Below, piece after piece: positions 52,789 to 62,517 of a stretch of DNA of 64,000 bases; the stretch's first letter is position 1, and each line of letters starts with the position of its first letter. The stretch covers positions 124,001 to 188,000 of IMG/VR virus record IMGVR_UViG_3300042540_001822; one strand, 5' to 3'. Under the pieces are notes generated by a model. The model saw only the letters and a program-made list of their open reading frames with translations. It did not search any database and was not told the DNA's origin. Made by a program: the position numbers and the translations under genes.

Positions 52789-53463
52789 TTAATTGGTTTT
52801 CTTTGTGATTACCCCATCGATGATTCCATAGGCCTTGGCTTCCTCGGCATCGAGCCAAAAATCACGGGTTGCGTCCTCCTGAACCTTTGCCGGATCCTTA
52901 CCACAAAAATCACCAAGTAGTTCAAATAGGATTTTATTCACCTTTTCCCATTCTTGAAAGTCAATTTTTGCGTCCTGGATGTTTCCTTCGAAGCCTCCAG
53001 AAGATTGGTGCAACATCACCTTAGAGAAGCGAAGAGAAAATCTTTTTCCCTTGGTCCCAGCACCTAATAGCACAGATCCCATAGAAGCTGCCATGCCCGT
53101 GTTGATTGTGGAGATGTCAGATTTAATGTACTGCATGACATCCACCATTGAAAGTCCAGATTTAACCGATCCCCCTGGTGAATCGATGTGCATTGTGATG
53201 TCCCTTTCATCAACGGAATCTAAAAACATCAGCTGTGCCTGAACTACTGTCGACATGGAATCACGGACCGGACCTGCCACCCATAAAATTCTGTCCATCA
53301 TGAGTCTTGAAAAAATGTCCAATTGTGTCACCCGAAGTTCTCTTTCTTCTAGAATGTAGGGGGTTAGTGAGCTTTGAACTTGTTTTTCATAGTAGTCCAA
53401 AGTGGAGGAACTAATTCCTTGAGATAGGGAGAATTTTTGAAATTCCGAAAAAAGTTTTGACAT
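52789..53463 (-). CDS. clpP: ATP-dependent Clp protease proteolytic subunit
   Basis: DIFSRLMMDRI, IDSPGGSV, AASMGS, MLHQ, RDFWL.AEEAKAYG. Confidence 0.96.
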   Translation of the reverse strand: MSKLFSEFQKFSLSQGISSSTLDYYEKQVQSSLTPYILEERELRVTQLDIFSRLMMDRILWVAGPVRDSMSTVVQAQLMFLDSVDERDITMHIDSPGGSVKSGLSMVDVMQYIKSDISTINTGMAASMGSVLLGAGTKGKRFSLRFSKVMLHQSSGGFEGNIQDAKIDFQEWEKVNKILFELLGDFCGKDPAKVQEDATRDFWLDAEEAKAYGIIDGVITKKTN

Positions 53464-54300: not shown

Positions 54301-54621
54301 TCAATAAACAATAGTTTGTGTCATATCTGGATTTGTTCTGTAAATTACCTCGGGACCAGGTGACATGATAACTGAAAGTTCATCTGACAGTGTTTGCAAA
54401 CTTTGGATAAAATTTTGAACGTCGTCTTTTTTGGAAGCGGGAAAATTAAAATGAGTCATAACATCATTAGTCAGGGACTCAATAGAATCATCAAATTGCC
54501 CGGCATCATGAAAATCCATGTCCTTTTCATATTTTGAAACGAAGTCTTTGATTTCGTCCTGTTCTACCTGTGACAAAGAAAGATTCGACACAAAATCATC
54601 AAATTCTAGAATTCTTTTCAT
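54301..54621 (-). CDS. Hypothetical protein with MKRILEFDDFV N-terminus, possible internal head protein
   Basis: ORF track; (TA)n element at 54637-54650. Confidence 0.75.
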   Translation of the reverse strand: MKRILEFDDFVSNLSLSQVEQDEIKDFVSKYEKDMDFHDAGQFDDSIESLTNDVMTHFNFPASKKDDVQNFIQSLQTLSDELSVIMSPGPEVIYRTNPDMTQTIVY

Positions 54622-54669
54622 ATGACAAATTTTTTTGATATATATATATTATAACCAAATAAATACAAA

Positions 54670-55116
54670 ATGGAAAAACATGATAAGGATAAAGATTTCT
54701 TGATCCAAGATTCGACAGAAGAATTTGAAACAACTGATTTGGATTCAAATGATGAATTCACCCTTGAAGAGGAGGATTTTGACGAAGAGCCAGCAGAAGA
54801 TATCGTAATTCAACCCCAAGAAGATAAAGACGAGGATGAAGATGATGATGATGAGGAAGATGATGACGAAGATCAGAAATCATCTGACACCGAAGATGAA
54901 ATTTCCATGCAATATTACATGGATGATGAACCAGGAAAACCGGAGTTTAAAAAATCTAATAAAGAAGAAGATGATGGGGAAGATGATGAGGATGATGAAG
55001 ATGAATATATTTCTTTAAGTCACTCAGGGGAAGAACACAAAACCCCACAGAAATCCTCAAAAGGAACAAAGATACTTTCATTTGAAGATTTTGTAGATGG
55101 TCTGGACGAGGATTAA
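54670..55116 (+). CDS. Extremely acidic (poly-Asp/Glu) protein ending KILSFEDFVDGLDED
   Basis: ORF track; divergent from 54301..54621. Confidence 0.8.
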   Translation: MEKHDKDKDFLIQDSTEEFETTDLDSNDEFTLEEEDFDEEPAEDIVIQPQEDKDEDEDDDDEEDDDEDQKSSDTEDEISMQYYMDDEPGKPEFKKSNKEEDDGEDDEDDEDEYISLSHSGEEHKTPQKSSKGTKILSFEDFVDGLDED

Positions 55117-55295
55117 TCCTCTGAAGTAGTACTTCTTCCAAGATCTCTACGGATCAGTTTTCTGACATAGTGAGAAATAGAAACTGGGGGATCACCTTTA
55201 GTTAAAGCTTGTTTCGAGATTTTTTTCCCAAGTTCTTCTAGATCTTCGCTAGAAAGCAACACTTGGATTTTTTCGGATTTTTCTTCTTTTGCCAT
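55113..55295 (-). CDS. Small ribbon-helix-helix/CopG-like DNA-binding protein
   Basis: KIQVLLSSEDLEEL...SISHYVRKLIRRDL. Confidence 0.55.
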   Translation of the reverse strand: MAKEEKSEKIQVLLSSEDLEELGKKISKQALTKGDPPVSISHYVRKLIRRDLGRSTTSED

Positions 55296-55308
55296 GATTG
55301 ATTTTTTT

Positions 55309-56781
55309 TTAAATTGATTCGAATTTTATACCTCCATGAGGCATTCCTTTTGTTTTAAGTGGTCTGTAACCTTTCATTTCGTCTGTAACTACGAATGCCT
55401 TATGAGGATTAACCATTACCCCCATTCTTTTCATTAAACCTCTATTTGCCAAAAAAGGAGTGCTTTTTTGAATTCTGTCAGTAGGTGCAACCTTAACATC
55501 GGAAATTTTAACTCCATTGAGCATCAAATCCAATGATATAATAGGTCTTTTTTCTTTTTCCCTTCCAATTTCAGTGTTTGTGTAACCTATAATTTCATCT
55601 GCGAAAGTATTTTCACCTATTTTCCAATATAGAACTCCATTTTTTTCCTCCAATTCATCAGCGTGAATCGAAGAGGCTGAAGATCCATTACCAGTGTCAA
55701 ATTTTGCCACCATTTTACCAATTCTGGGAATATCTAAAGTTTCTAAATAGCCAACCTCCATTTTGCTATAGCTCCAATTATTCTTGTCTATAACATAGTC
55801 AATAACATCTCCAACAATAGGTCTTCCAATTGCCTGAGAAATACCTTCTGTTCCAGGAGAAGAATTGACCTCCAAAATGTAGGGTTTACCCGATTCAGCA
55901 TCAATCATGATGTCTACTCCACACCAGTGGCTTCCGACTGCATTAGCGGCTTCACAAGCGAGAGCTGCTGTTTCTTCGTCGATATCATAGGATGAAACCT
56001 GCCCTCCCAAAGAGTAATTAGTTCTAAAGTCTTTTTCAACAGCTTCTCTTTTCATGGAACCGAGAATGGTGTAATTTCCTTTTTTTGAAATAAGTGGATC
56101 GAATCTTTTAACGATTACCTGAATTCTAAGATCAAAATTAGAATTAATCTTTTCTTGTATCAAAATTTCCTTTTCCGGGTCTAGCTTTGCTATGGTCTGA
56201 TAAACCGACTTTAAAGAAGCATAAGAATCAACAATCGAAACTCCAATTCCCTGGGTCCCAGACAGTAATTTCATAACGACAGGAAATTTACCTCCAATCT
56301 GCTCCAAAGCGGAATCTAGATTGTCTTCCCCGTTGACTAATGCGTATCTAGGAACGGGTAAACCCTCACCCTCCAAAATCCGGGAGGTAAGAAATTTGCT
56401 TTCACAAATCTCAATTGATTCTAAAGAGTTAACGCAAAAATATCTAGATGCCTCCAAATCTCTCATGATTTGTTTGGTGTAGGAGTTGGTAATAACTCCT
56501 CTCCGAGGAATAATTGCAGTTTTATCTGGTTTAATTAGAATTTCTTTGCCATCTTTTTTTCCTTCACGAACCATGTGTCCGTTGTAAATTTTTTCCAACG
56601 TTATGTTGTTTATGTCCACCACGTTGCAGACGATTCCCCGATTTTCACACTCGGCCATAAAAGATTTAGAGGTAGGGCTGGGTTTGGCGGTACCGGACAG
56701 GATAAGAATTTCTACCCCATCTGAGGACTCGGATTCATTCAAGAAGGTTGAAAAATTAACAACAGAAGGAGCAAAGGACAT
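55309..56781 (-). CDS. RimK-family ATP-grasp ligase fused to a C-terminal retropepsin-like (RimB/DUF785-type) protease; start moved to MSFAPS
   Basis: SKFLT..IL...GLPVP, FPVVMK...GTQGIGV, IQEKI, DLRI, FRTNYSLGG, GVDIM, LEVNSSPG; then AKFDTGNG...SSIHA. Confidence 0.88.
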   Translation of the reverse strand: MSFAPSVVNFSTFLNESESSDGVEILILSGTAKPSPTSKSFMAECENRGIVCNVVDINNITLEKIYNGHMVREGKKDGKEILIKPDKTAIIPRRGVITNSYTKQIMRDLEASRYFCVNSLESIEICESKFLTSRILEGEGLPVPRYALVNGEDNLDSALEQIGGKFPVVMKLLSGTQGIGVSIVDSYASLKSVYQTIAKLDPEKEILIQEKINSNFDLRIQVIVKRFDPLISKKGNYTILGSMKREAVEKDFRTNYSLGGQVSSYDIDEETAALACEAANAVGSHWCGVDIMIDAESGKPYILEVNSSPGTEGISQAIGRPIVGDVIDYVIDKNNWSYSKMEVGYLETLDIPRIGKMVAKFDTGNGSSASSIHADELEEKNGVLYWKIGENTFADEIIGYTNTEIGREKEKRPIISLDLMLNGVKISDVKVAPTDRIQKSTPFLANRGLMKRMGVMVNPHKAFVVTDEMKGYRPLKTKGMPHGGIKFESI

Positions 56782-56810
56782 GAAAGTGGGAAGAAATTTT
56801 TCCTTATATA

Positions 56811-57440
56811 TCACTTTTTTTCAACAAACTCTGTAAAATAATGTTGATCTGTCTCGAAATTTGTTTTATTTTCTACCGAATAAACATTCATATCAATTTT
56901 GTAACCAGGATTTTTTTCTATCCTCTTAAATGTCCACGCATTATCCATCCAAATTATTCTATTATTTGGATAGATGAAATAATTTCCATTGTCCATCTTG
57001 AAAACGTGTCCACATTTGTGTTCTGGTGTTTCTGAAAAATTGGTATCTAATAAGGATCTATTTTCAAAAGACCAATCAAGAGTAAAAAGGTAAATCCCCT
57101 GTCTTTTTAAACCCGAAATTGAAATTAAATCTGCTCTTAATCCGCTCATTCTTGCCCTCACCTGAACATCGATGTACGAGCTAAAGCAATCCCAATAAAT
57201 ATGCTCGCTTAAAGGCAATAATTCAGCATCCTTTTTCCAACAAAAAGCGTTAATGGGTCTTCTTGTCCAATTGACCCCATTTTCCAAAAAAGCTTCAAAT
57301 AATGGAACTCTTTTTTCAATCGAAGCAACCGAATGAACATCTGCTAAGGTAAAATCACCGTGTCCTTTTTCGTGGTTAAATAAAAATTCATTTCTGATGA
57401 AACAGGTCAGAGTTGGGATGTTGTGATTTAGATAGGGCAT
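56811..57440 (-). CDS. Conserved phage hypothetical protein
   Basis: 209-aa ORF (YLNHNIP...WDCFS...YPNNRIIW). Confidence 0.8.
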   Translation of the reverse strand: MPYLNHNIPTLTCFIRNEFLFNHEKGHGDFTLADVHSVASIEKRVPLFEAFLENGVNWTRRPINAFCWKKDAELLPLSEHIYWDCFSSYIDVQVRARMSGLRADLISISGLKRQGIYLFTLDWSFENRSLLDTNFSETPEHKCGHVFKMDNGNYFIYPNNRIIWMDNAWTFKRIEKNPGYKIDMNVYSVENKTNFETDQHYFTEFVEKK

Positions 57441-57893: not shown

Positions 57894-59060
57894 TTAAAAA
57901 AGAGTATTAATCATGAAAAGGTTGGGAGAAATCGGGTGGTGACCCATTACTTCTATGAAGCGGTTGATTGGATCTAAAATTGTTTTGGTGAACTGTTGGT
58001 CTAAATCCACCGGAGGAGCATACTCGTAAGGGTAATTTCCTTGAGAATAGGCAAAAACATTGTTTTCCTGTGGATTATTGGTTTTAACAAAGTAAAATCT
58101 AACTTTTTCTCCGCTTCCTAACAGGGGATATTTGTCCTTGTACTTCGAGTTGTTTAGTATGTAATTATGATAGCCAGAAGCTCTGACGTGAATAGGGGTA
58201 GCCTTGGCAAATTCGAAACCTGTGGTGTCGTTTAAAATGAACTTCTCGTAGTTGTTAACCGAAATAGCCAAGGCGATCCGTTCTGGTTCCTGGGCTTTAA
58301 AATCTTTCTTGATTGATTTTAACTCTGTAACGAACTCCCTAATGTTGAAAGACCTACCTTTCGTTAAAATAAACTTAGTTAAGTACATTAGCTTCTCACG
58401 AACAAAGGCAGGTGTGCCTCCTTTTATCATCTCAACTCCAGTGGTTTTGATGTTGCTTAGAGGTTCGAACTCCACACCATCTGAGTAAACTGTGTTCGTA
58501 ACATATTTTTTCTTGCCAAGAAAGATGGCATTAATCGACAAGGTCTCAAGTTCGAAATCCTGATAGTTTTCCGTGTTCCATTTTTTGGCGTAAATCTCAA
58601 AGCACTTTTTAAGATAACCTTTTAATCTAAATTCATTGATTTTTAAAATCAATTCCTTTGGATCTCCTTGCCAGTTACAAGACGCCACGACTTCCTGAAA
58701 TGTTACATAATTGGAGTCAGTATCACCATAGATAGTTAAGGGCCGGTGTACCTTCTTGACATCGGTGACTCCTAGTTTTTCATGAAGATCGACATCATCG
58801 TGCCAGAAATCGTGAAAGTATCTATGAATAATTTTTTCTGAATACTTGATTAAATCCTGTCCCTGAAGAGTAACTGCTTCTGCAACGTCTGTATTAAAGC
58901 AAGCAAAGAAATTATTTCCTACCGCTCCATAGATGGAGTTCATCGTTAACTTTACGGCTTGTTCCTCGTTCTTGAGCTCATTCTTTAGGGAGGTGAGCTC
59001 TTCTATTTTTAATTTTAGTTCTTTCGCATTTAGATTATGTGGTTCCATTCTTGTTCCCAA
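57894..59060 (-). CDS. Family-B DNA polymerase, C-terminal subunit only (split polymerase)
   Basis: KLTMNSIYG (motif B), AVTLQGQ, YGDTDS (motif C), KKKY; no exonuclease domain or motif A. Confidence 0.9.
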   Translation of the reverse strand: MGTRMEPHNLNAKELKLKIEELTSLKNELKNEEQAVKLTMNSIYGAVGNNFFACFNTDVAEAVTLQGQDLIKYSEKIIHRYFHDFWHDDVDLHEKLGVTDVKKVHRPLTIYGDTDSNYVTFQEVVASCNWQGDPKELILKINEFRLKGYLKKCFEIYAKKWNTENYQDFELETLSINAIFLGKKKYVTNTVYSDGVEFEPLSNIKTTGVEMIKGGTPAFVREKLMYLTKFILTKGRSFNIREFVTELKSIKKDFKAQEPERIALAISVNNYEKFILNDTTGFEFAKATPIHVRASGYHNYILNNSKYKDKYPLLGSGEKVRFYFVKTNNPQENNVFAYSQGNYPYEYAPPVDLDQQFTKTILDPINRFIEVMGHHPISPNLFMINTLF

Positions 59061-59066
59061 TCTAAT

Positions 59067-59828
59067 TTATTTCTCGATGATTCCAATCGCAGTGGAAGTT
59101 TTTGTCTGCTCTGAACAGAAAACGATGCGATTATCGTGAACATAACAGTGGGATGATTCAGAGTCTACATAATTCAAATGCGATTTGTAAATTGAGGAAT
59201 CCATTTTACCTGACCCCTTGATTTCTGAAGTTCCAATGTTTAATTTAAAGTCAAAAGAATCTCCGGTTACCCTAACGTTGTCTTTTTCAATTCGGAAAAC
59301 AAGAAGTTCCTCTGCGTTGGACTCCATGCCACACAAAGAAGATAAAGAAGAAAAATCGGAAGAATACAATTTGAAGTTTGCTTCTGAATCTTCTTTCGAA
59401 TGAACCATTTCTCCAATTGAATCCTCGACATAAGACAGCAAAGAAAGATCTGCACACTTAATCTTAATTTTCAGCGAGTTTGAAATGACATTGAGTTCGG
59501 TAGCCACACAAGATCCATCCAATTTAGAAATCTCAAGATTCAAAAAGATTTCTTCTTCTGCACGGTAGTACCTGAAGCAGTCTATCAATCTAACGACATC
59601 GATCAAACCAATTTTAATTCTTTCGCACTTCAATTTTGCGAATCCTTCGAGTGGTTCGAAAATTTGATCTACTGGAATCGATGCAAATTTCATAACAGAT
59701 TTATCTGGTGTGTGAATTTTGCAAAAAAGTTCAGTTTCATTCAATTCCAATAGAACGCTTCGATCTACAACCTTTAATTTCTTCAGAAATGCGATTAAGT
59801 TGGTGGTACTTAAAACCCTAATTTTCAT
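59067..59828 (-). CDS. Probable sliding clamp (gp45/PCNA-like)
   Basis: 253 aa, alternating helix/strand pattern, directly upstream of the polymerase; no diagnostic motif. Confidence 0.45.
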   Translation of the reverse strand: MKIRVLSTTNLIAFLKKLKVVDRSVLLELNETELFCKIHTPDKSVMKFASIPVDQIFEPLEGFAKLKCERIKIGLIDVVRLIDCFRYYRAEEEIFLNLEISKLDGSCVATELNVISNSLKIKIKCADLSLLSYVEDSIGEMVHSKEDSEANFKLYSSDFSSLSSLCGMESNAEELLVFRIEKDNVRVTGDSFDFKLNIGTSEIKGSGKMDSSIYKSHLNYVDSESSHCYVHDNRIVFCSEQTKTSTAIGIIEK

Positions 59829-59892: not shown

Positions 59893-61278
59893 TTATTCTT
59901 CTTCTTGTTCTTCGGTTGGTGTTTCTTCTTCTACCTCGAAAATTTGAATGTCGGAATCCAAATTTCTGACGGAAGGTTGTGAAGAGGTAACAAGTAAGGT
60001 GGCAGAAGTCTTTTTAACCGGAATCACCTCGAGAAGTTTTACGACCTTTTCTTGTGCTTTAATAGCCACCTGTGTTGTCTTTATTTGTTGTTTGATGGAT
60101 TTAATTTCCTCTTGAATTTCAACAATGTGATTGGTAGAAAGCTTTACTAGTTGAATCGATGAAAGACGTCCAGAGATGGATTTATTAAACTGGGTCAGGA
60201 ATTCCAAAATCTCTTCGTTTTTCCTTTTGCTTCCGCTCATGTAAATTAAAAATTTCAATTTTGCCTCCAGAAATTCCATTTCGTTGGTCAAATCCTGAAC
60301 ATCCCGATTTAATCTTTTAAGTTTAACATATTCAAGATGAGATTTGAATTCTTCGAGATAGGACTTTACAGAATCAAACTGCCTGACCCCTCCATCTTTG
60401 ATAAAAACAATGTCCTCCTTAACCAAAATTTGAGTTAGCTTTTTTACTGTCTGTGTTAAAGATGTAAACTCGGCAGAGGTGCTTTTATAAAACCAAAGGG
60501 TAATGTCACACTTGCTTTGTGAGTTATTGTTTAACTTGTAGTCGACGCCCAGATTTTCCAATTTTCTGACAATTTTTTCCATAAAGGAATCAAATCTCAT
60601 CACTGGGGGAAGATCAAAAATACGTATGGATTTTTTTTGTTGGTTAGCCTCAAACCCGCTCTCCAATAACCACACATTTTCGTGATCTTCGTATTTGTAA
60701 ATTTTACCGGAGAAATCTTTAAAGTAGGGCTTTAATACCTTGTTCTTTCCCTGTAAAAATTCAACAATGTCCTCAAGCTTACGTGGCAAGATATTGGTTC
60801 GATATCCTACTGCTATGCCAATGATATGGGTTAGCAATCCGATGGGTATTTCCACGTTAAGCCAGTCGTGGCCTCCCTCTTCGTTCTGCTCATTCAAATC
60901 GGAATGCCGAGTAATGATATCTTTCACACCACGGTTTATTCTCACCGAAGTGTATCTTGGAGCGGATGGATTTGGATTGACCGGTGATCCAAAAAATCCA
61001 TCTCCTTCTAAAATGGAGAAGGAACATCCAAAGGGTCTGGCCAATTTTGAAATAGCTCCGGCCAAAGAAGAATCTCCGTGGTGATATAAACCAGTTCTGA
61101 TGACCTCTCCAACTAAACCAATTGTTTTGTGAAAAGTAGACGGACTATTTTCTAAAATAATTCTTTGAACTGGGGTTAGAGAATCGTAGAAATTTGGAAT
61201 ACCTCTGGACTGAAGAACATAAAGAGCATAATCCCTATATTGGGTATTAATTTGGTCTGTAATCGAAATAAAGTTCAA
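59893..61278 (-). CDS. Type II DNA topoisomerase subunit A (GyrA/ParC/gp52-like)
   Basis: YALYV..SRGIP...DSLTPVQR, YHHGDSS, GDGFFGS, SAPRYT (catalytic Tyr). Confidence 0.93.
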   Translation of the reverse strand: MNFISITDQINTQYRDYALYVLQSRGIPNFYDSLTPVQRIILENSPSTFHKTIGLVGEVIRTGLYHHGDSSLAGAISKLARPFGCSFSILEGDGFFGSPVNPNPSAPRYTSVRINRGVKDIITRHSDLNEQNEEGGHDWLNVEIPIGLLTHIIGIAVGYRTNILPRKLEDIVEFLQGKNKVLKPYFKDFSGKIYKYEDHENVWLLESGFEANQQKKSIRIFDLPPVMRFDSFMEKIVRKLENLGVDYKLNNNSQSKCDITLWFYKSTSAEFTSLTQTVKKLTQILVKEDIVFIKDGGVRQFDSVKSYLEEFKSHLEYVKLKRLNRDVQDLTNEMEFLEAKLKFLIYMSGSKRKNEEILEFLTQFNKSISGRLSSIQLVKLSTNHIVEIQEEIKSIKQQIKTTQVAIKAQEKVVKLLEVIPVKKTSATLLVTSSQPSVRNLDSDIQIFEVEEETPTEEQEEE

Positions 61279-61377: not shown

Positions 61378-62517
61378 TTAAGAGGTAGACTTATCGCCCT
61401 CGCCTTTAATTGCAGAAGCCAGAACAGGAGCTGGAACATCGTCCATTTCTACCAAAACAAAGTCAATTTGATTCTGGTTTTCCTTCCTCATTTCTTGAAG
61501 AACTTTTTGTAAATCGGTTGCATTTTTGAAAACGATACATCCAGCTGAATACCAACCTATTTCTTCTGTGGTGCCTGTTTTATTTCCTCTGTGAATGTTG
61601 ATTCCATAATTTCCAGTTTCCGCATTTCCAGGAGAAAAGGTGGTGAACTTGGCCTTATTCACATCATCGACAATTGGGAATCTTTCTACCTTTACAGGTC
61701 CAGCCTGTACCAAAGCATCATAATCATTATGTTTACCAATTTTGTAAGGATATACCCCTGGCCGTAAAATTGCCAATCCATCTGGATTAAGAGCTTCTTT
61801 GCTTTTGGCGAACCAATAATTTCTCAATTTAGAAATTAGAAAACTAGCACCTGGAACCGTGGTTCCTTGCATGATGGACAAAGATTTTTCATTTTCTGGA
61901 CTCATCAAAATCAAAGCATCAATAAATCTATTGGGATAATTCTTTTTAACCGAAAGGTAATTTCTAAGACCAACCAGGTTATATTTTTTAAAGTTCATTT
62001 CCCTGGCCAAACCTTTTTTTTCTAAAATGTATTTTAATCCTTCCCAAGACAAATCTTTAACGTCGTCAAATTTGTAATCTCCAGATTTTAATTCTTTGAA
62101 AATTTCTTTTGTTTCAGCCTCATCTGCAGTGGAAACCCCGGCAGAATTTAAAGCCTCAATGTCTTTTTCGGTTGTATCTTTAGAATTAGAAGATTGATCA
62201 CCGGATGTCCAATCCTGAGGGAGAATCCCCTTTTTTTTCAAAGCATCGAGTAATTCTTTATTTTCGTCCTTATGGAATTCCCCGGCAATTTTTTTGCCAA
62301 TTTCGGTTCCATAAAAAAGGTCTGCAACGGAGATCGAGCTTTTACCCAGAGAGGTTGATTTGGACGTACTAGAACTATCCTCAGATGAAGATTTTGTTTC
62401 TTTTGTTGCTTGTTTTAAAATAGATTCACTGGAATCTTCCTGAATTTTGGTGTAGCTATTAGAATTCAGAATAACGAAAAATTCAGAAAATTTCAAAATG
62501 TTTTGTGACACAGACAA
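61378..62517 (-). CDS. Protein with C-terminal YkuD/L,D-transpeptidase-like domain
   Basis: GINIHRG...IGWYSAGCIVF (H...SxGC); N-terminal ILKFSEF motif and Ser/Thr/Lys-rich linker. Confidence 0.65.
   Translation of the reverse strand: MSVSQNILKFSEFFVILNSNSYTKIQEDSSESILKQATKETKSSSEDSSSTSKSTSLGKSSISVADLFYGTEIGKKIAGEFHKDENKELLDALKKKGILPQDWTSGDQSSNSKDTTEKDIEALNSAGVSTADEAETKEIFKELKSGDYKFDDVKDLSWEGLKYILEKKGLAREMNFKKYNLVGLRNYLSVKKNYPNRFIDALILMSPENEKSLSIMQGTTVPGASFLISKLRNYWFAKSKEALNPDGLAILRPGVYPYKIGKHNDYDALVQAGPVKVERFPIVDDVNKAKFTTFSPGNAETGNYGINIHRGNKTGTTEEIGWYSAGCIVFKNATDLQKVLQEMRKENQNQIDFVLVEMDDVPAPVLASAIKGEGDKSTS

What the first reader, a model, noticed from the sequence alone, without database searches (positions are those of the whole stretch)
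54670..56812. RimK-protease fusion with a capsid-targeting-like N-terminus beside a poly-acidic protein
Seen: a RimK ATP-grasp domain and a DTG aspartic-protease-like domain in one ORF, a GATATATAA element upstream and N-terminal VVNFSTFLNE. A poly-D/E protein is encoded nearby on the other strand. Established: RimK polyglutamylates ribosomal protein S6, and the RimB-type protease encoded beside rimK in Pseudomonas trims polyglutamate. Inference: a fused writer/eraser, possibly virion-delivered, that retunes host ribosomes. The acidic protein could be a substrate, a mimic or a DNA mimic.
Basis: partly seen in the sequence, partly recalled or inferred. Interest (0 to 1): 0.6.

Follow-up and report, generated by a model that had tools for sequence, protein, structure and literature searches.

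The report
Phage glutamate-ligase/protease fusion, likely packaged
A huge freshwater phage encodes one protein that joins a RimK-type glutamate-adding enzyme to a RimB-type glutamate-trimming protease, and its short N-terminal tag and late-gene signal suggest, without proving, that it is loaded into the phage head.

Summary
ORF 55309-56781(-), 490 aa from the ATG that homologues use, is a RimK-family alpha-L-glutamate ligase. It scores above the NCBIfam subfamily cut-off and has a RimK fold. It is fused to a C-terminal retropepsin-like peptidase of the RimB/Rlo (PF05618) type with an invariant DTG.

This domain order is the reverse of the published bacterial RimBK hybrid. The family is large: more than 5,700 metagenomic homologues and more than 550 viral contigs, from freshwater jumbo phages (230-430 kb) probably infecting Bacteroidota.

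The 16-residue N-terminus fits the pattern of the T4 capsid-targeting sequence and is nearly invariant in the family. Relatives carry a T4-type prohead protease fused to a scaffold built of 12-14 repeats of that pattern. GATATATAA is a real recurrent upstream element. In relatives it precedes terminase, tail-fibre and prohead protease genes, and the RimK fusion.

Late expression and encapsidation are therefore plausible but unproven. The ribosomal S6 target is unsupported: S6 in five co-binned Bacteroidota MAGs does not end in Glu.

The acidic ORF is a real, positionally conserved gene with a hypervariable D/E body and a conserved C-terminal aromatic motif. Its role is open.

Verdict: a new variant of a known kind, of moderate to high interest.

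The parts
56804..56812 (-). GATATATAA element, starting 31 nt upstream of the ATG; late-promoter-like
   Evidence: Sequence. 19 of 26 genomic copies lie upstream of an ORF in sense. The same element sits 25-37 nt upstream of the RimK-fusion gene in most relatives, and about 30-35 nt upstream of the prohead protease-scaffold ORF in 5 of 5 relatives. In relative G002 it precedes terminase L, a head-closure-like gene and tail-fibre genes.
55309..56781 (-). RimK-RimB-like fusion gene (490 aa plus stop), from the ATG used by homologues
56734..56781 (-). 16-residue N-terminal leader MSFAPSVVNFSTFLNE. It fits aromatic-x-x-aromatic-hydrophobic-x-Glu and ends in L-N-E followed by Ser.
   Evidence: F, F, N and E are at least 90% conserved in 26 homologues. 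T4 IPIII and IPII begin with the same pattern. The leader is disordered in the model (pLDDT below 50 for residues 1-29).
55792..56712 (-). Pre-ATP-grasp plus ATP-grasp domains of a RimK-family alpha-L-glutamate ligase
   Evidence: Pfam, NCBIfam TIGR00768, PDB RimK by sequence, Foldseek. The nucleotide- and metal-binding motifs are invariant.
55387..55755 (-). Retropepsin-like aspartic peptidase domain (RimB/Rlo/DUF785 type); catalytic DTG at 55690-55698
55312..55386 (-). Conserved C-terminal tail (Y..P..KG..H.GI.F) beyond the peptidase domain; function unknown
   Evidence: Conserved. Also present in a chromosomal Flavobacteriales MAG homologue.
55113..55295 (-). 60-aa ORF directly downstream, 67-95% identical in 31 related loci; possibly ribbon-helix-helix
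   Evidence: tblastn against related loci. The Atlas feature search gives only a lead: RHH clusters at 0.90-0.91. No Pfam hit.
54670..55116 (+). Poly-acidic protein, 148 aa, 45% D+E, convergent with the fusion gene
   Evidence: Positional counterparts exist in about 25 loci. No family hit in Pfam, PHROGs or NCBIfam.
55069..55113 (+). Conserved C-terminal motif of the acidic protein (KILSFEDFV...); relatives have RV[LM]x[FY]x[DE][FY]
54637..54654 (.). GATATATATATATTATAA in the 48-nt divergent spacer; starts 33 nt before the acidic ORF's ATG and also faces the 106-aa gene
   Evidence: The same arrangement occurs in relative G002.
54301..54621 (-). 106-aa ORF of unknown function with N-terminus MKRILEFDDFV; conserved in 31 loci as part of the cassette

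Best explanation
The gene encodes a bifunctional enzyme.

Shown by homology and fold:
- Residues about 24-330 (numbered from the ATG at 56781) are a RimK-family ATP-grasp ligase. Such enzymes add alpha-linked L-glutamate to a carboxylate acceptor.
- Residues about 343-465 are a RimB/Rlo-type retropepsin-like aspartic peptidase with an intact DTG. In Pseudomonas this type of peptidase cuts polyglutamate and stimulates RimK.
- The domain order, ligase then peptidase, is the reverse of the bacterial RimBK hybrid.

Inferred:
- The gene is transcribed late, from the GATATATAA element that also precedes head and tail genes in relatives.
- The 16-residue N-terminal leader works like the T4 capsid-targeting sequence. 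It takes the protein into the scaffolding core of the prohead. The T4-type prohead protease then removes it after ...L-N-E.
- The mature enzyme is carried in the head and leaves with the DNA into the next host, probably a freshwater member of Bacteroidota.
- In the host it would build and trim alpha-polyglutamate, either on a protein C-terminus or as free polymer.

The target is not identified, and ribosomal S6 is not favoured here. The neighbouring acidic protein carries a related aromatic motif at its C-terminus and the same upstream element. It is most simply a co-expressed, possibly co-packaged, acidic head-core protein, comparable to the acidic-tailed T4 gp67.
For: Enzyme identity:
- Pfam, NCBIfam and PDB sequence hits.
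- Fold matches: RimK TM 0.89; RloA2, Lpg0085 and then HIV-1 protease.
- Profile hits to PF05618-type structures at 8.4e-11.
- Invariant catalytic motifs.
- RimB biochemistry and the RimBK hybrid are described in PMC11957791.

Leader:
- It is nearly invariant across the family and is kept in members at 43-47% identity.
- The Pelagibacter phage Mosig homologue starts with ...FKNYLEE.
- T4 IPIII and IPII begin with MKTYQEFIAE. In T4 these 10 residues suffice for encapsidation, and gp21-type proteases cut after Glu (PMC9026906; PMC3012670).
- The pattern is enriched at residues 3-22 of ORFs: 11 observed against 2.7 expected in this genome (p=1e-4), and 13 against 2.0 in a complete relative (p=2e-7).

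Head machinery in relatives:
- All five relatives examined (230-430 kb, two with terminal repeats) carry a Peptidase_S77 domain. It is fused to a scaffold containing 12-14 repeats of Y-S-x-Y-L-A-E, next to a gp23-type capsid gene.
- Tenacibaculum phage PTm5, a cultured relative, has the same fusion, annotated as scaffold plus protease.

Promoter-like element:
-.
- Genes carrying the element are enriched for aromatic N-terminal leaders (odds ratio 5.0, p=1e-5 here; 3.7, p=4e-4 in G002).

Other:
- The YerA41 homologue is annotated as a structural protein.
- T4 gp67 has an acidic tail.
Against: - There are no virion or transcript data for this phage.
- The contig (219 kb, estimated 88% complete) has no hit to the T4 prohead-protease or major-capsid-protein families, so the protease argument rests on relatives.
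- The leader pattern is short and degenerate. I chose it after seeing examples.
- A position-specific matrix built from the scaffold repeats did not retrieve the leaders. The likeness to the scaffold repeat therefore holds only at the pattern level.
- Tandem paralogues inflate the promoter-leader association.
- The gene sits among replication genes (DNA polymerase, topoisomerase, thioredoxin).
- The YerA41 particle proteome lists 63 proteins, including polymerases and topoisomerases, and the genome record flags ribonucleotide reductase alpha as present in the particle, so that list is weak evidence.
- That the element is a late promoter is inferred from the genes it precedes, not measured.
Confidence: 0.5

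Rival explanations
1. The enzyme is the same but is not packaged. It works in the cytoplasm of the infected cell as a host-takeover or auxiliary enzyme. It would glutamylate and trim a host protein (classically ribosomal S6) or make free poly-alpha-glutamate. The N-terminal motif would serve another purpose, such as docking to a different partner, stability or translation.
For: - The gene lies in a replication-gene neighbourhood. In Pelagibacter phage Mosig its homologue lies next to regA and DNA polymerase.
- Cyanophage RimK-like genes lacking the peptidase domain are annotated as auxiliary genes.
- RimB stimulates free polyglutamate synthesis by RimK (PMC11957791).
Against: - The leader is conserved, fits the T4 targeting-sequence pattern, and ends in a protease-type site.
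- The gene shares its upstream element with morphogenesis genes.
- S6 of candidate host lineages lacks a C-terminal Glu.
- The protein fails the S6-ligase equivalog model.
Confidence: 0.28
2. The enzyme acts during head morphogenesis on the phage's own proteins. Either the ligase extends the Glu C-termini created by the prohead protease, which cuts after Glu, or the peptidase degrades the co-packaged poly-acidic protein. Either activity would tune a polyanionic filling of a very large capsid.
For: - Each prohead holds many Glu-terminated fragments: 12-14 repeat sites per scaffold molecule.
- The acidic neighbour carries a related docking-type motif and the same upstream element.
- T4 cores contain an acidic-tailed protein, gp67.
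- RimB cuts internal acidic (polyGlu) runs.
Against: - This is entirely inferential.
- The acidic ORF is missing from several close relatives and from all distant ones that keep the enzyme.
- Its acidic runs are mixed D/E, whereas RimB is reported to be Glu-specific.
- It is unknown whether ATP and glutamate reach the inside of a prohead.
- The complex prediction gave no answer.
Confidence: 0.1
3. The ligase does not modify proteins. It would add glutamate or another amino acid to a small molecule, a cofactor or a DNA-linked group. The peptidase-like domain would then be a binding or regulatory module.
For: - The second-best NCBIfam hits are cofactor glutamate ligases: MptN 121.6 bits and CofF 77 bits.
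- YerA41, which has a homologue, carries hypermodified thymidine (PMC9023294 abstract).
Against: - Those hits are far below their cut-offs (350 and 300 bits).
- The best structural and sequence matches are RimK proteins.
- The DTG and the rest of the peptidase core are invariant, which argues for an active peptidase.
- This phage's DNA is sequenced routinely in many lake metagenomes.
Confidence: 0.07
4. This rival concerns the acidic ORF only. It would be a gp33-like late-transcription co-activator, or another sliding-clamp client whose C-terminal hydrophobic-acidic tail binds the clamp, unrelated to the enzyme.
For: - T4 gp33 is small and ends in ...TLDFLL.
- The acidic ORFs end in ...VLSFxDF plus a few residues.
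- A clamp-like gene may lie at 59067-59828. This is my reading and was not scanned.
Against: - There is no conserved folded body, only a hypervariable low-complexity D/E region.
- The motif is not at the extreme C-terminus.
- The same kind of motif sits at the N-terminus of many unrelated proteins.
Confidence: 0.05

Closest known systems
RimK (E. coli, Pseudomonas): ribosomal protein S6 / poly-alpha-L-glutamate ligase
   Same: ATP-grasp fold with a pre-ATP-grasp domain, the same nucleotide- and metal-binding motifs, and a score above the RimK subfamily cut-off.
   Different: - Only about 26-28% identical.
- Fails the S6-ligase equivalog model.
- Has an insertion of about 10 residues.
- Carries an N-terminal leader and a C-terminal peptidase domain.
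- Is phage-encoded.
RimB (Pseudomonas fluorescens) and RloA/RloA2, Lpg0085 (PF05618/DUF785 retropepsin-like peptidases)
   Same: The same fold, and DTG in the same position. RimB removes glutamates from S6 and cuts internal polyGlu (PMC11957791).
   Different: - Divergent enough to miss the Pfam threshold as a single sequence.
- The motif is DTGN rather than DTGA.
- Fused to the ligase.
- Has an extra conserved C-terminal tail.
RimBK hybrid (Desulfotalea psychrophila DP2392; Flavobacteriales, Rhodobacterales)
   Same: Both activities sit in one polypeptide. The hybrid has been shown to be proteolytically active. It is common in aquatic Bacteroidota, the probable host group here.
   Different: - The domain order is reversed: RimB is N-terminal in RimBK and C-terminal here.
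- The phage protein adds a leader.
- The reversed order points to an independent fusion. That is an inference; no phylogeny was made.
T4 internal proteins IPI-III and Alt (capsid-targeting sequence, cleaved by gp21)
   Same: An N-terminal leader of 10-16 residues with aromatic-x-x-aromatic-hydrophobic-x-Glu, followed by a small residue. A T4-type protease is present in the clade.
   Different: The cargo is a 54-kDa two-enzyme fusion. Neither packaging nor cleavage has been shown. The phages are jumbo relatives of Lak and PTm-type phages.
Yersinia phage YerA41 Gp066 and Pelagibacter phage Mosig gp5
   Same: The same ligase-then-peptidase architecture at 32-35% identity. YerA41 Gp066 was found in particle preparations.
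   Different: They have different genomic contexts and no acidic neighbour. The YerA41 leader is less clear.
T4 gp67 prohead core protein (comparison for the acidic ORF)
   Same: A small protein with a long D/E run, in a T4-type head system.
   Different: No sequence homology. The topology differs: a conserved C-terminal motif and an acidic body here, a structured N-terminus and an acidic tail in gp67.

Membership tests
RimK family alpha-L-glutamate ligase (TIGR00768 / PF08443) | Score above the curated family cut-off | tested here: met
   TIGR00768 scores 148.3 bits against 143.4. PF08443 scores 112.3 bits against 21.
RimK family alpha-L-glutamate ligase (TIGR00768 / PF08443) | ATP-grasp fold with a pre-ATP-grasp domain | tested here: met
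   Foldseek to 7qys, 7qyr and 5zct gives E about 1e-23 and TM 0.85-0.89. Rimk_N matches partially at E=7e-5.
RimK family alpha-L-glutamate ligase (TIGR00768 / PF08443) | Conserved nucleotide- and Mg-binding motifs (K...GTQGIGV loop, QE, FRxN, E-V-N) | tested here: met
   These are invariant in 26 homologues and align to the RimK structures.
Ribosomal protein S6--L-glutamate ligase (equivalog NF007764) | Score above the equivalog cut-off | tested here: not met
   96.6 bits against 331.
Ribosomal protein S6--L-glutamate ligase (equivalog NF007764) | An S6 acceptor ending in Glu in the host | tested here: not met
   S6 of five Bacteroidota MAGs that co-bin with relatives ends in A, S, S, S and G. 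The host assignment itself is uncertain.
RimB/Rlo retropepsin-like peptidase (PF05618) | Pfam gathering score as a single sequence | tested here: not met
   17.6 bits against 27.
RimB/Rlo retropepsin-like peptidase (PF05618) | Profile-level homology to, and shared fold with, solved members | tested here: met
   hmmsearch gives 9g59 8.4e-11, 2pma 1.2e-9 and 9g58 2e-8 over the whole domain. Foldseek gives 1.8e-8 with TM 0.71-0.76.
RimB/Rlo retropepsin-like peptidase (PF05618) | Catalytic Asp in a DTG motif | tested here: met
   DTG is invariant in 26 plus 22 sequences and aligns to the DTG of 9g59 and 2pma.
RimB/Rlo retropepsin-like peptidase (PF05618) | Homodimer forming the active site; polyGlu-specific cleavage | not tested
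The activity needs an assay.
RimBK hybrid (Little et al. 2025) | RimB domain at the N-terminus of RimK | tested here: not met
   The order here is ligase (about 24-330) then peptidase (about 343-465).
T4-type capsid-targeted (CTS) head protein | N-terminal leader resembling the CTS and ending in a (L/I)-x-E site | tested here: met
   The leader contains ...NFSTFLNE followed by S. T4 has MKTYQEFIAE followed by A.
T4-type capsid-targeted (CTS) head protein | A T4-type (Peptidase_S77) prohead protease in the phage | tested here: inconclusive
   Present in 5 of 5 relatives examined. Not found in the window's own, incomplete contig.
T4-type capsid-targeted (CTS) head protein | Presence in virions with the leader removed | not testable with these tools
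   The only indirect evidence is the 'structural protein' annotation of YerA41 Gp066, which comes from a permissive proteome.

The most novel reading that the evidence does not exclude
The fusion is an encapsidated polyglutamylase/deglutamylase that acts inside the head. The T4-type prohead protease cuts after Glu, so it creates thousands of Glu-terminated fragments per particle. These are the kind of acceptor a RimK enzyme extends. Together with the co-packaged poly-acidic protein, ligase and peptidase would build and size a polyanionic filling of these very large capsids. Alternatively, the pair would be ejected as the first known phage-delivered protein-glutamylating effector.
Probability: 0.1. 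Interest if true: 0.85.

Novelty: new variant of a known kind. Interest (0 to 1): 0.6.

Why it matters
RimK and RimB are known as a bacterial system that adjusts the polyglutamate tail of ribosomal protein S6. Their biology outside Pseudomonas and E. coli is largely unknown.

Here the two activities are fused in the reverse order. The fusion is found in a very abundant family of freshwater jumbo phages, with thousands of metagenomic homologues. It carries sequence signals of late expression and capsid targeting.

If the enzyme is packaged, it would be a new class of phage-delivered or head-internal enzyme. It would also offer a tractable entry into two open questions: what jumbo phages of Bacteroidota carry inside their heads, and what RimK-type enzymes do when S6 is not a suitable acceptor.

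Two by-products may be useful to others:
- a candidate late-promoter element, GATATATA(A);
- a candidate targeting leader for this uncultured phage clade.

Tried and rejected
- **Complex prediction, enzyme plus acidic protein.** Score 0.00, verdict 'no answer'. This is not evidence for or against binding.
- **Matrix built from 39 scaffold repeat units, scanned over both genomes.** It did not retrieve the RimK leader or the other leaders. Only 5 of the top 25 hits were N-terminal, against 11-15% expected. I therefore dropped the claim that the leader is a copy of a scaffold repeat and kept only the pattern-level likeness.
- **Alignment of the relatives' capsid protein to T4 gp23.** It did not place their ...SLNE/SAGAY at the known T4 cleavage site. 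That site stays a guess.
- **T4 protease and capsid families in the window's own contig.** No hits. The hits came only from relatives.
- **Megablast of 10 kb of the window against the phage collection.** No match.
- **Acidic protein as a C-terminal acceptor for the ligase.** Rejected as a general idea. Relatives end in N, K, Q or I, not Glu.
- **tblastn of the acidic protein against related loci.** No hits. Its conservation is positional, plus the C-terminal motif.
- **Atlas feature searches.** They gave only a weak ribbon-helix-helix lead for the 60-aa ORF and nothing for the 106-aa ORF.
- **Iyer et al. 2009, on RimK-peptidase gene neighbourhoods.** The paper was not held. My recollection of it is not used as evidence.
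Full report
**Setting**

The window is bases 124001-188000 of a 219,475-bp viral contig. The contig is about 34% G+C, linear, and estimated 88% complete. Near-identical DNA occurs in lake and freshwater metagenomes from about 15 studies. The finding spans three genes:
- an acidic ORF, 54670-55116(+);
- a 60-aa ORF, 55113-55295(-);
- a 501-aa ORF, 55309-56814(-).

**The fusion protein**

The true start is almost certainly the ATG at 56781. 25 full-length homologues of 62-92% identity begin there.

The N-terminal two thirds is a RimK-family ligase:
- Pfam RimK scores E=2.9e-32.
- NCBIfam TIGR00768 scores 148.3 bits against a cut-off of 143.4.
- RimK crystal structures match by sequence at 4e-28 and by fold with TM up to 0.89.
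- The glycine-rich ATP loop, the FRxN motif and the E-V-N metal site are invariant.

It is not an equivalog of the S6 ligase (96.6 bits against 331).

The C-terminal third is a retropepsin-like peptidase. It scores below the Pfam threshold as a single sequence (PF05618, E=0.0037). A profile of 22 diverse family members matches the whole domain of three solved PF05618-type proteins: RloA2 (9g59, 8.4e-11), Lpg0085 (2pma, 1.2e-9) and RloA (9g58, 2e-8). The domain model (pLDDT 88.9) hits the same structures at 1.8e-8, followed by HIV-1 protease. The DTG at 55690-55698 is invariant.

**What is already known**

RimB is a retropepsin-like endopeptidase. It removes glutamates from polyglutamylated S6, cuts internal polyGlu and stimulates poly-alpha-glutamate synthesis by RimK. 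[quoted passage not shown]

Here the order is reversed. Phage homologues with this reversed order include YerA41 Gp066 and Pelagibacter phage Mosig gp5. Cyanophages carry the ligase alone.

The family is very large. More than 5,700 proteins score E<=1e-5 among the 8,000 candidates scored, and at least 556 viral-contig loci encode it. A chromosomal homologue in a Flavobacteriales MAG has the same peptidase and tail behind an ATP-grasp region that appears degenerate.

**The phage clade**

Five relatives of 230-430 kb were examined, two of them with terminal repeats. Each carries:
- a T4-type capsid gene;
- a Peptidase_S77 prohead protease fused to a scaffold region containing 12-14 tandem 14-residue repeats, each with Y-S-x-Y-L-A-E.

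The capsid protein is closest to an uncultured 462-kb phage, Prevotella phage Lak-C1 and Tenacibaculum phage PTm5. PTm5 has the same protease-scaffold fusion, and its depositors annotated it as such.

The eight bacterial MAG contigs that encode relatives are, with one exception labelled only 'uncultured bacterium', all filed under Bacteroidota. The host is therefore probably a freshwater member of that phylum. This is an inference from co-binning and from viral relatives.

**The N-terminal leader**

MSFAPSVVNFSTFLNE is disordered in the model. Its F, F, N and E positions are at least 90% conserved. The motif persists in members at 43-47% identity and in Mosig.

It fits the pattern aromatic-x-x-aromatic-hydrophobic-x-Glu. 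T4 IPIII and IPII show the same pattern in MKTYQEFIAE. In T4 those ten residues are sufficient for encapsidation, and gp21-type proteases cut after Glu.

The pattern is enriched at residues 3-22 of predicted proteins:
- 11 observed against 2.7 expected in this genome (p=1e-4);
- 13 observed against 2.0 expected in the complete relative G002 (p=2e-7).

Looser aromatic patterns are enriched 1.4-2-fold. Bearers include LysM, endolysin-like and LRR-like proteins and tandem paralogue families.

Two caveats apply. I chose the pattern after seeing examples. A matrix built from the scaffold repeats does not retrieve the leaders.

**The upstream element**

GATATATAA lies at 56804-56812. 19 of its 26 genomic copies lie just upstream of ORFs in sense.

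In G002, ATATATA is the most over-represented upstream 7-mer, at 17-fold. There it precedes the large terminase, a head-closure-like gene, tail-fibre genes and the protease-scaffold ORF.

The element lies about 30-35 nt upstream of the protease-scaffold ORF in 5 of 5 relatives. It lies 25-37 nt upstream of the fusion gene in most relatives.

It is absent before the replication genes of this window.

Genes with the element are enriched for aromatic leaders: odds ratio 5.0 (p=1e-5) here and 3.7 (p=4e-4) in G002. Paralogues inflate these figures.

I read it as a late-promoter-like element. This is an inference.

**The acidic ORF and the cassette**

The 60-aa ORF (67-95% identical) and the 106-aa ORF (32-80% identical) follow the fusion gene in 31 related loci. 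The flanking genes vary.

The acidic ORF sits between those two genes, on the other strand, in about 25 of these loci. Its D/E body is hypervariable: no tblastn hit, and lengths of 93-164 aa. Its C-terminus is conserved...QKNTP...RV[LM]x[FY]x[DE][FY]. It is absent from several close relatives and from all distant ones.

It shares the AT-alternating element with the divergent 106-aa gene.

Its C-termini are not Glu, so it is not a natural C-terminal acceptor. T4 gp67 shows that poly-acidic proteins occur in T4-type head cores. A gp33-like clamp-binding reading is weaker.

**The target**

S6 of five Bacteroidota MAGs that co-bin with relatives does not end in Glu. The ribosome-retuning idea therefore lacks its precondition there, although the host is not established.

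**Verdict**

- The enzymatic reading is well supported.
- Late expression and encapsidation are a reasonable, testable inference (about 0.5).
- The S6 target is not supported.
- The acidic protein's role is open.

This is a new variant (reversed order, phage-borne, leader-tagged) of the known RimK/RimB kind.

Noticed in passing
G000 77263-82810, 87529-88997, 112196-114745 (outside the window; loci L006-L008): Tandem arrays of paralogous genes (about 190-290 aa). Each is preceded at a fixed 12-15 nt by GGATATATA, and each starts MKH[IL]xxFxxFE...; one member has a weak LRR hit. Each upstream gene ends ...GFDELGLF.
   Followed up: partly
Relatives: L098-L100 (G001, G002, G005), about 400 aa upstream of the capsid gene: The prohead protease (Peptidase_S77) is fused to a scaffold region with 12-14 perfect-register 14-residue repeats, (I/N)xYS(E/K)YLAEN(L/V)Dx. 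Tenacibaculum phage PTm5 has a fusion of the same kind with a different repeat.
   Followed up: partly
window 57894-59060 (-): A 388-aa ORF that reads as only the C-terminal part of a family-B DNA polymerase (it contains YGDTDS). The polymerase appears to be split, or its other part is encoded elsewhere. Pelagibacter phage Mosig also annotates two polymerase ORFs.
   Followed up: no
window 59893-61278 (-): A topoisomerase II medium-subunit-like ORF ends in an acidic tail, ...EEETPTEEQEEE. It is one of the few phage proteins here that end in Glu, and so a conceivable RimK-type acceptor.
   Followed up: no
window 52789-53463 (-): A ClpP-like protease ORF (224 aa, identified by eye) lies among the replication genes. 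It is separate from the T4-type prohead protease of the clade.
   Followed up: no
L127 2557-3768 (Flavobacteriales MAG, chromosomal context with purF, fabD, phoH): A 403-aa bacterial homologue with the same C-terminal peptidase and tail. Its ATP-grasp region seems degenerate: the E-V-N metal site reads H-I-Q.
   Followed up: partly
window 56811-57440 (-): The 209-aa upstream gene matches PHROG 3704, labelled 'ferredoxin' (E=4e-49), but has no Pfam or NCBIfam hit. The label looks doubtful. The gene is shared only with the three closest relatives.
   Followed up: no
G002 169783-170223 (+): A second acidic protein with the opposite topology: a leader-like N-terminus (MNKIASFEDF...) and a poly-D/E C-terminal tail ending ...EEEEEEA, reminiscent of T4 gp67.
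   Followed up: no
window 61378-62517 (-): A 379-aa protein with an endolysin-like C-terminal region (PHROG 3000, E=1e-20; endolysin family 1e-6). It has a leader-like N-terminus (...ILKFSEFFV) and the GATATATA element 34 nt upstream.
   Followed up: partly
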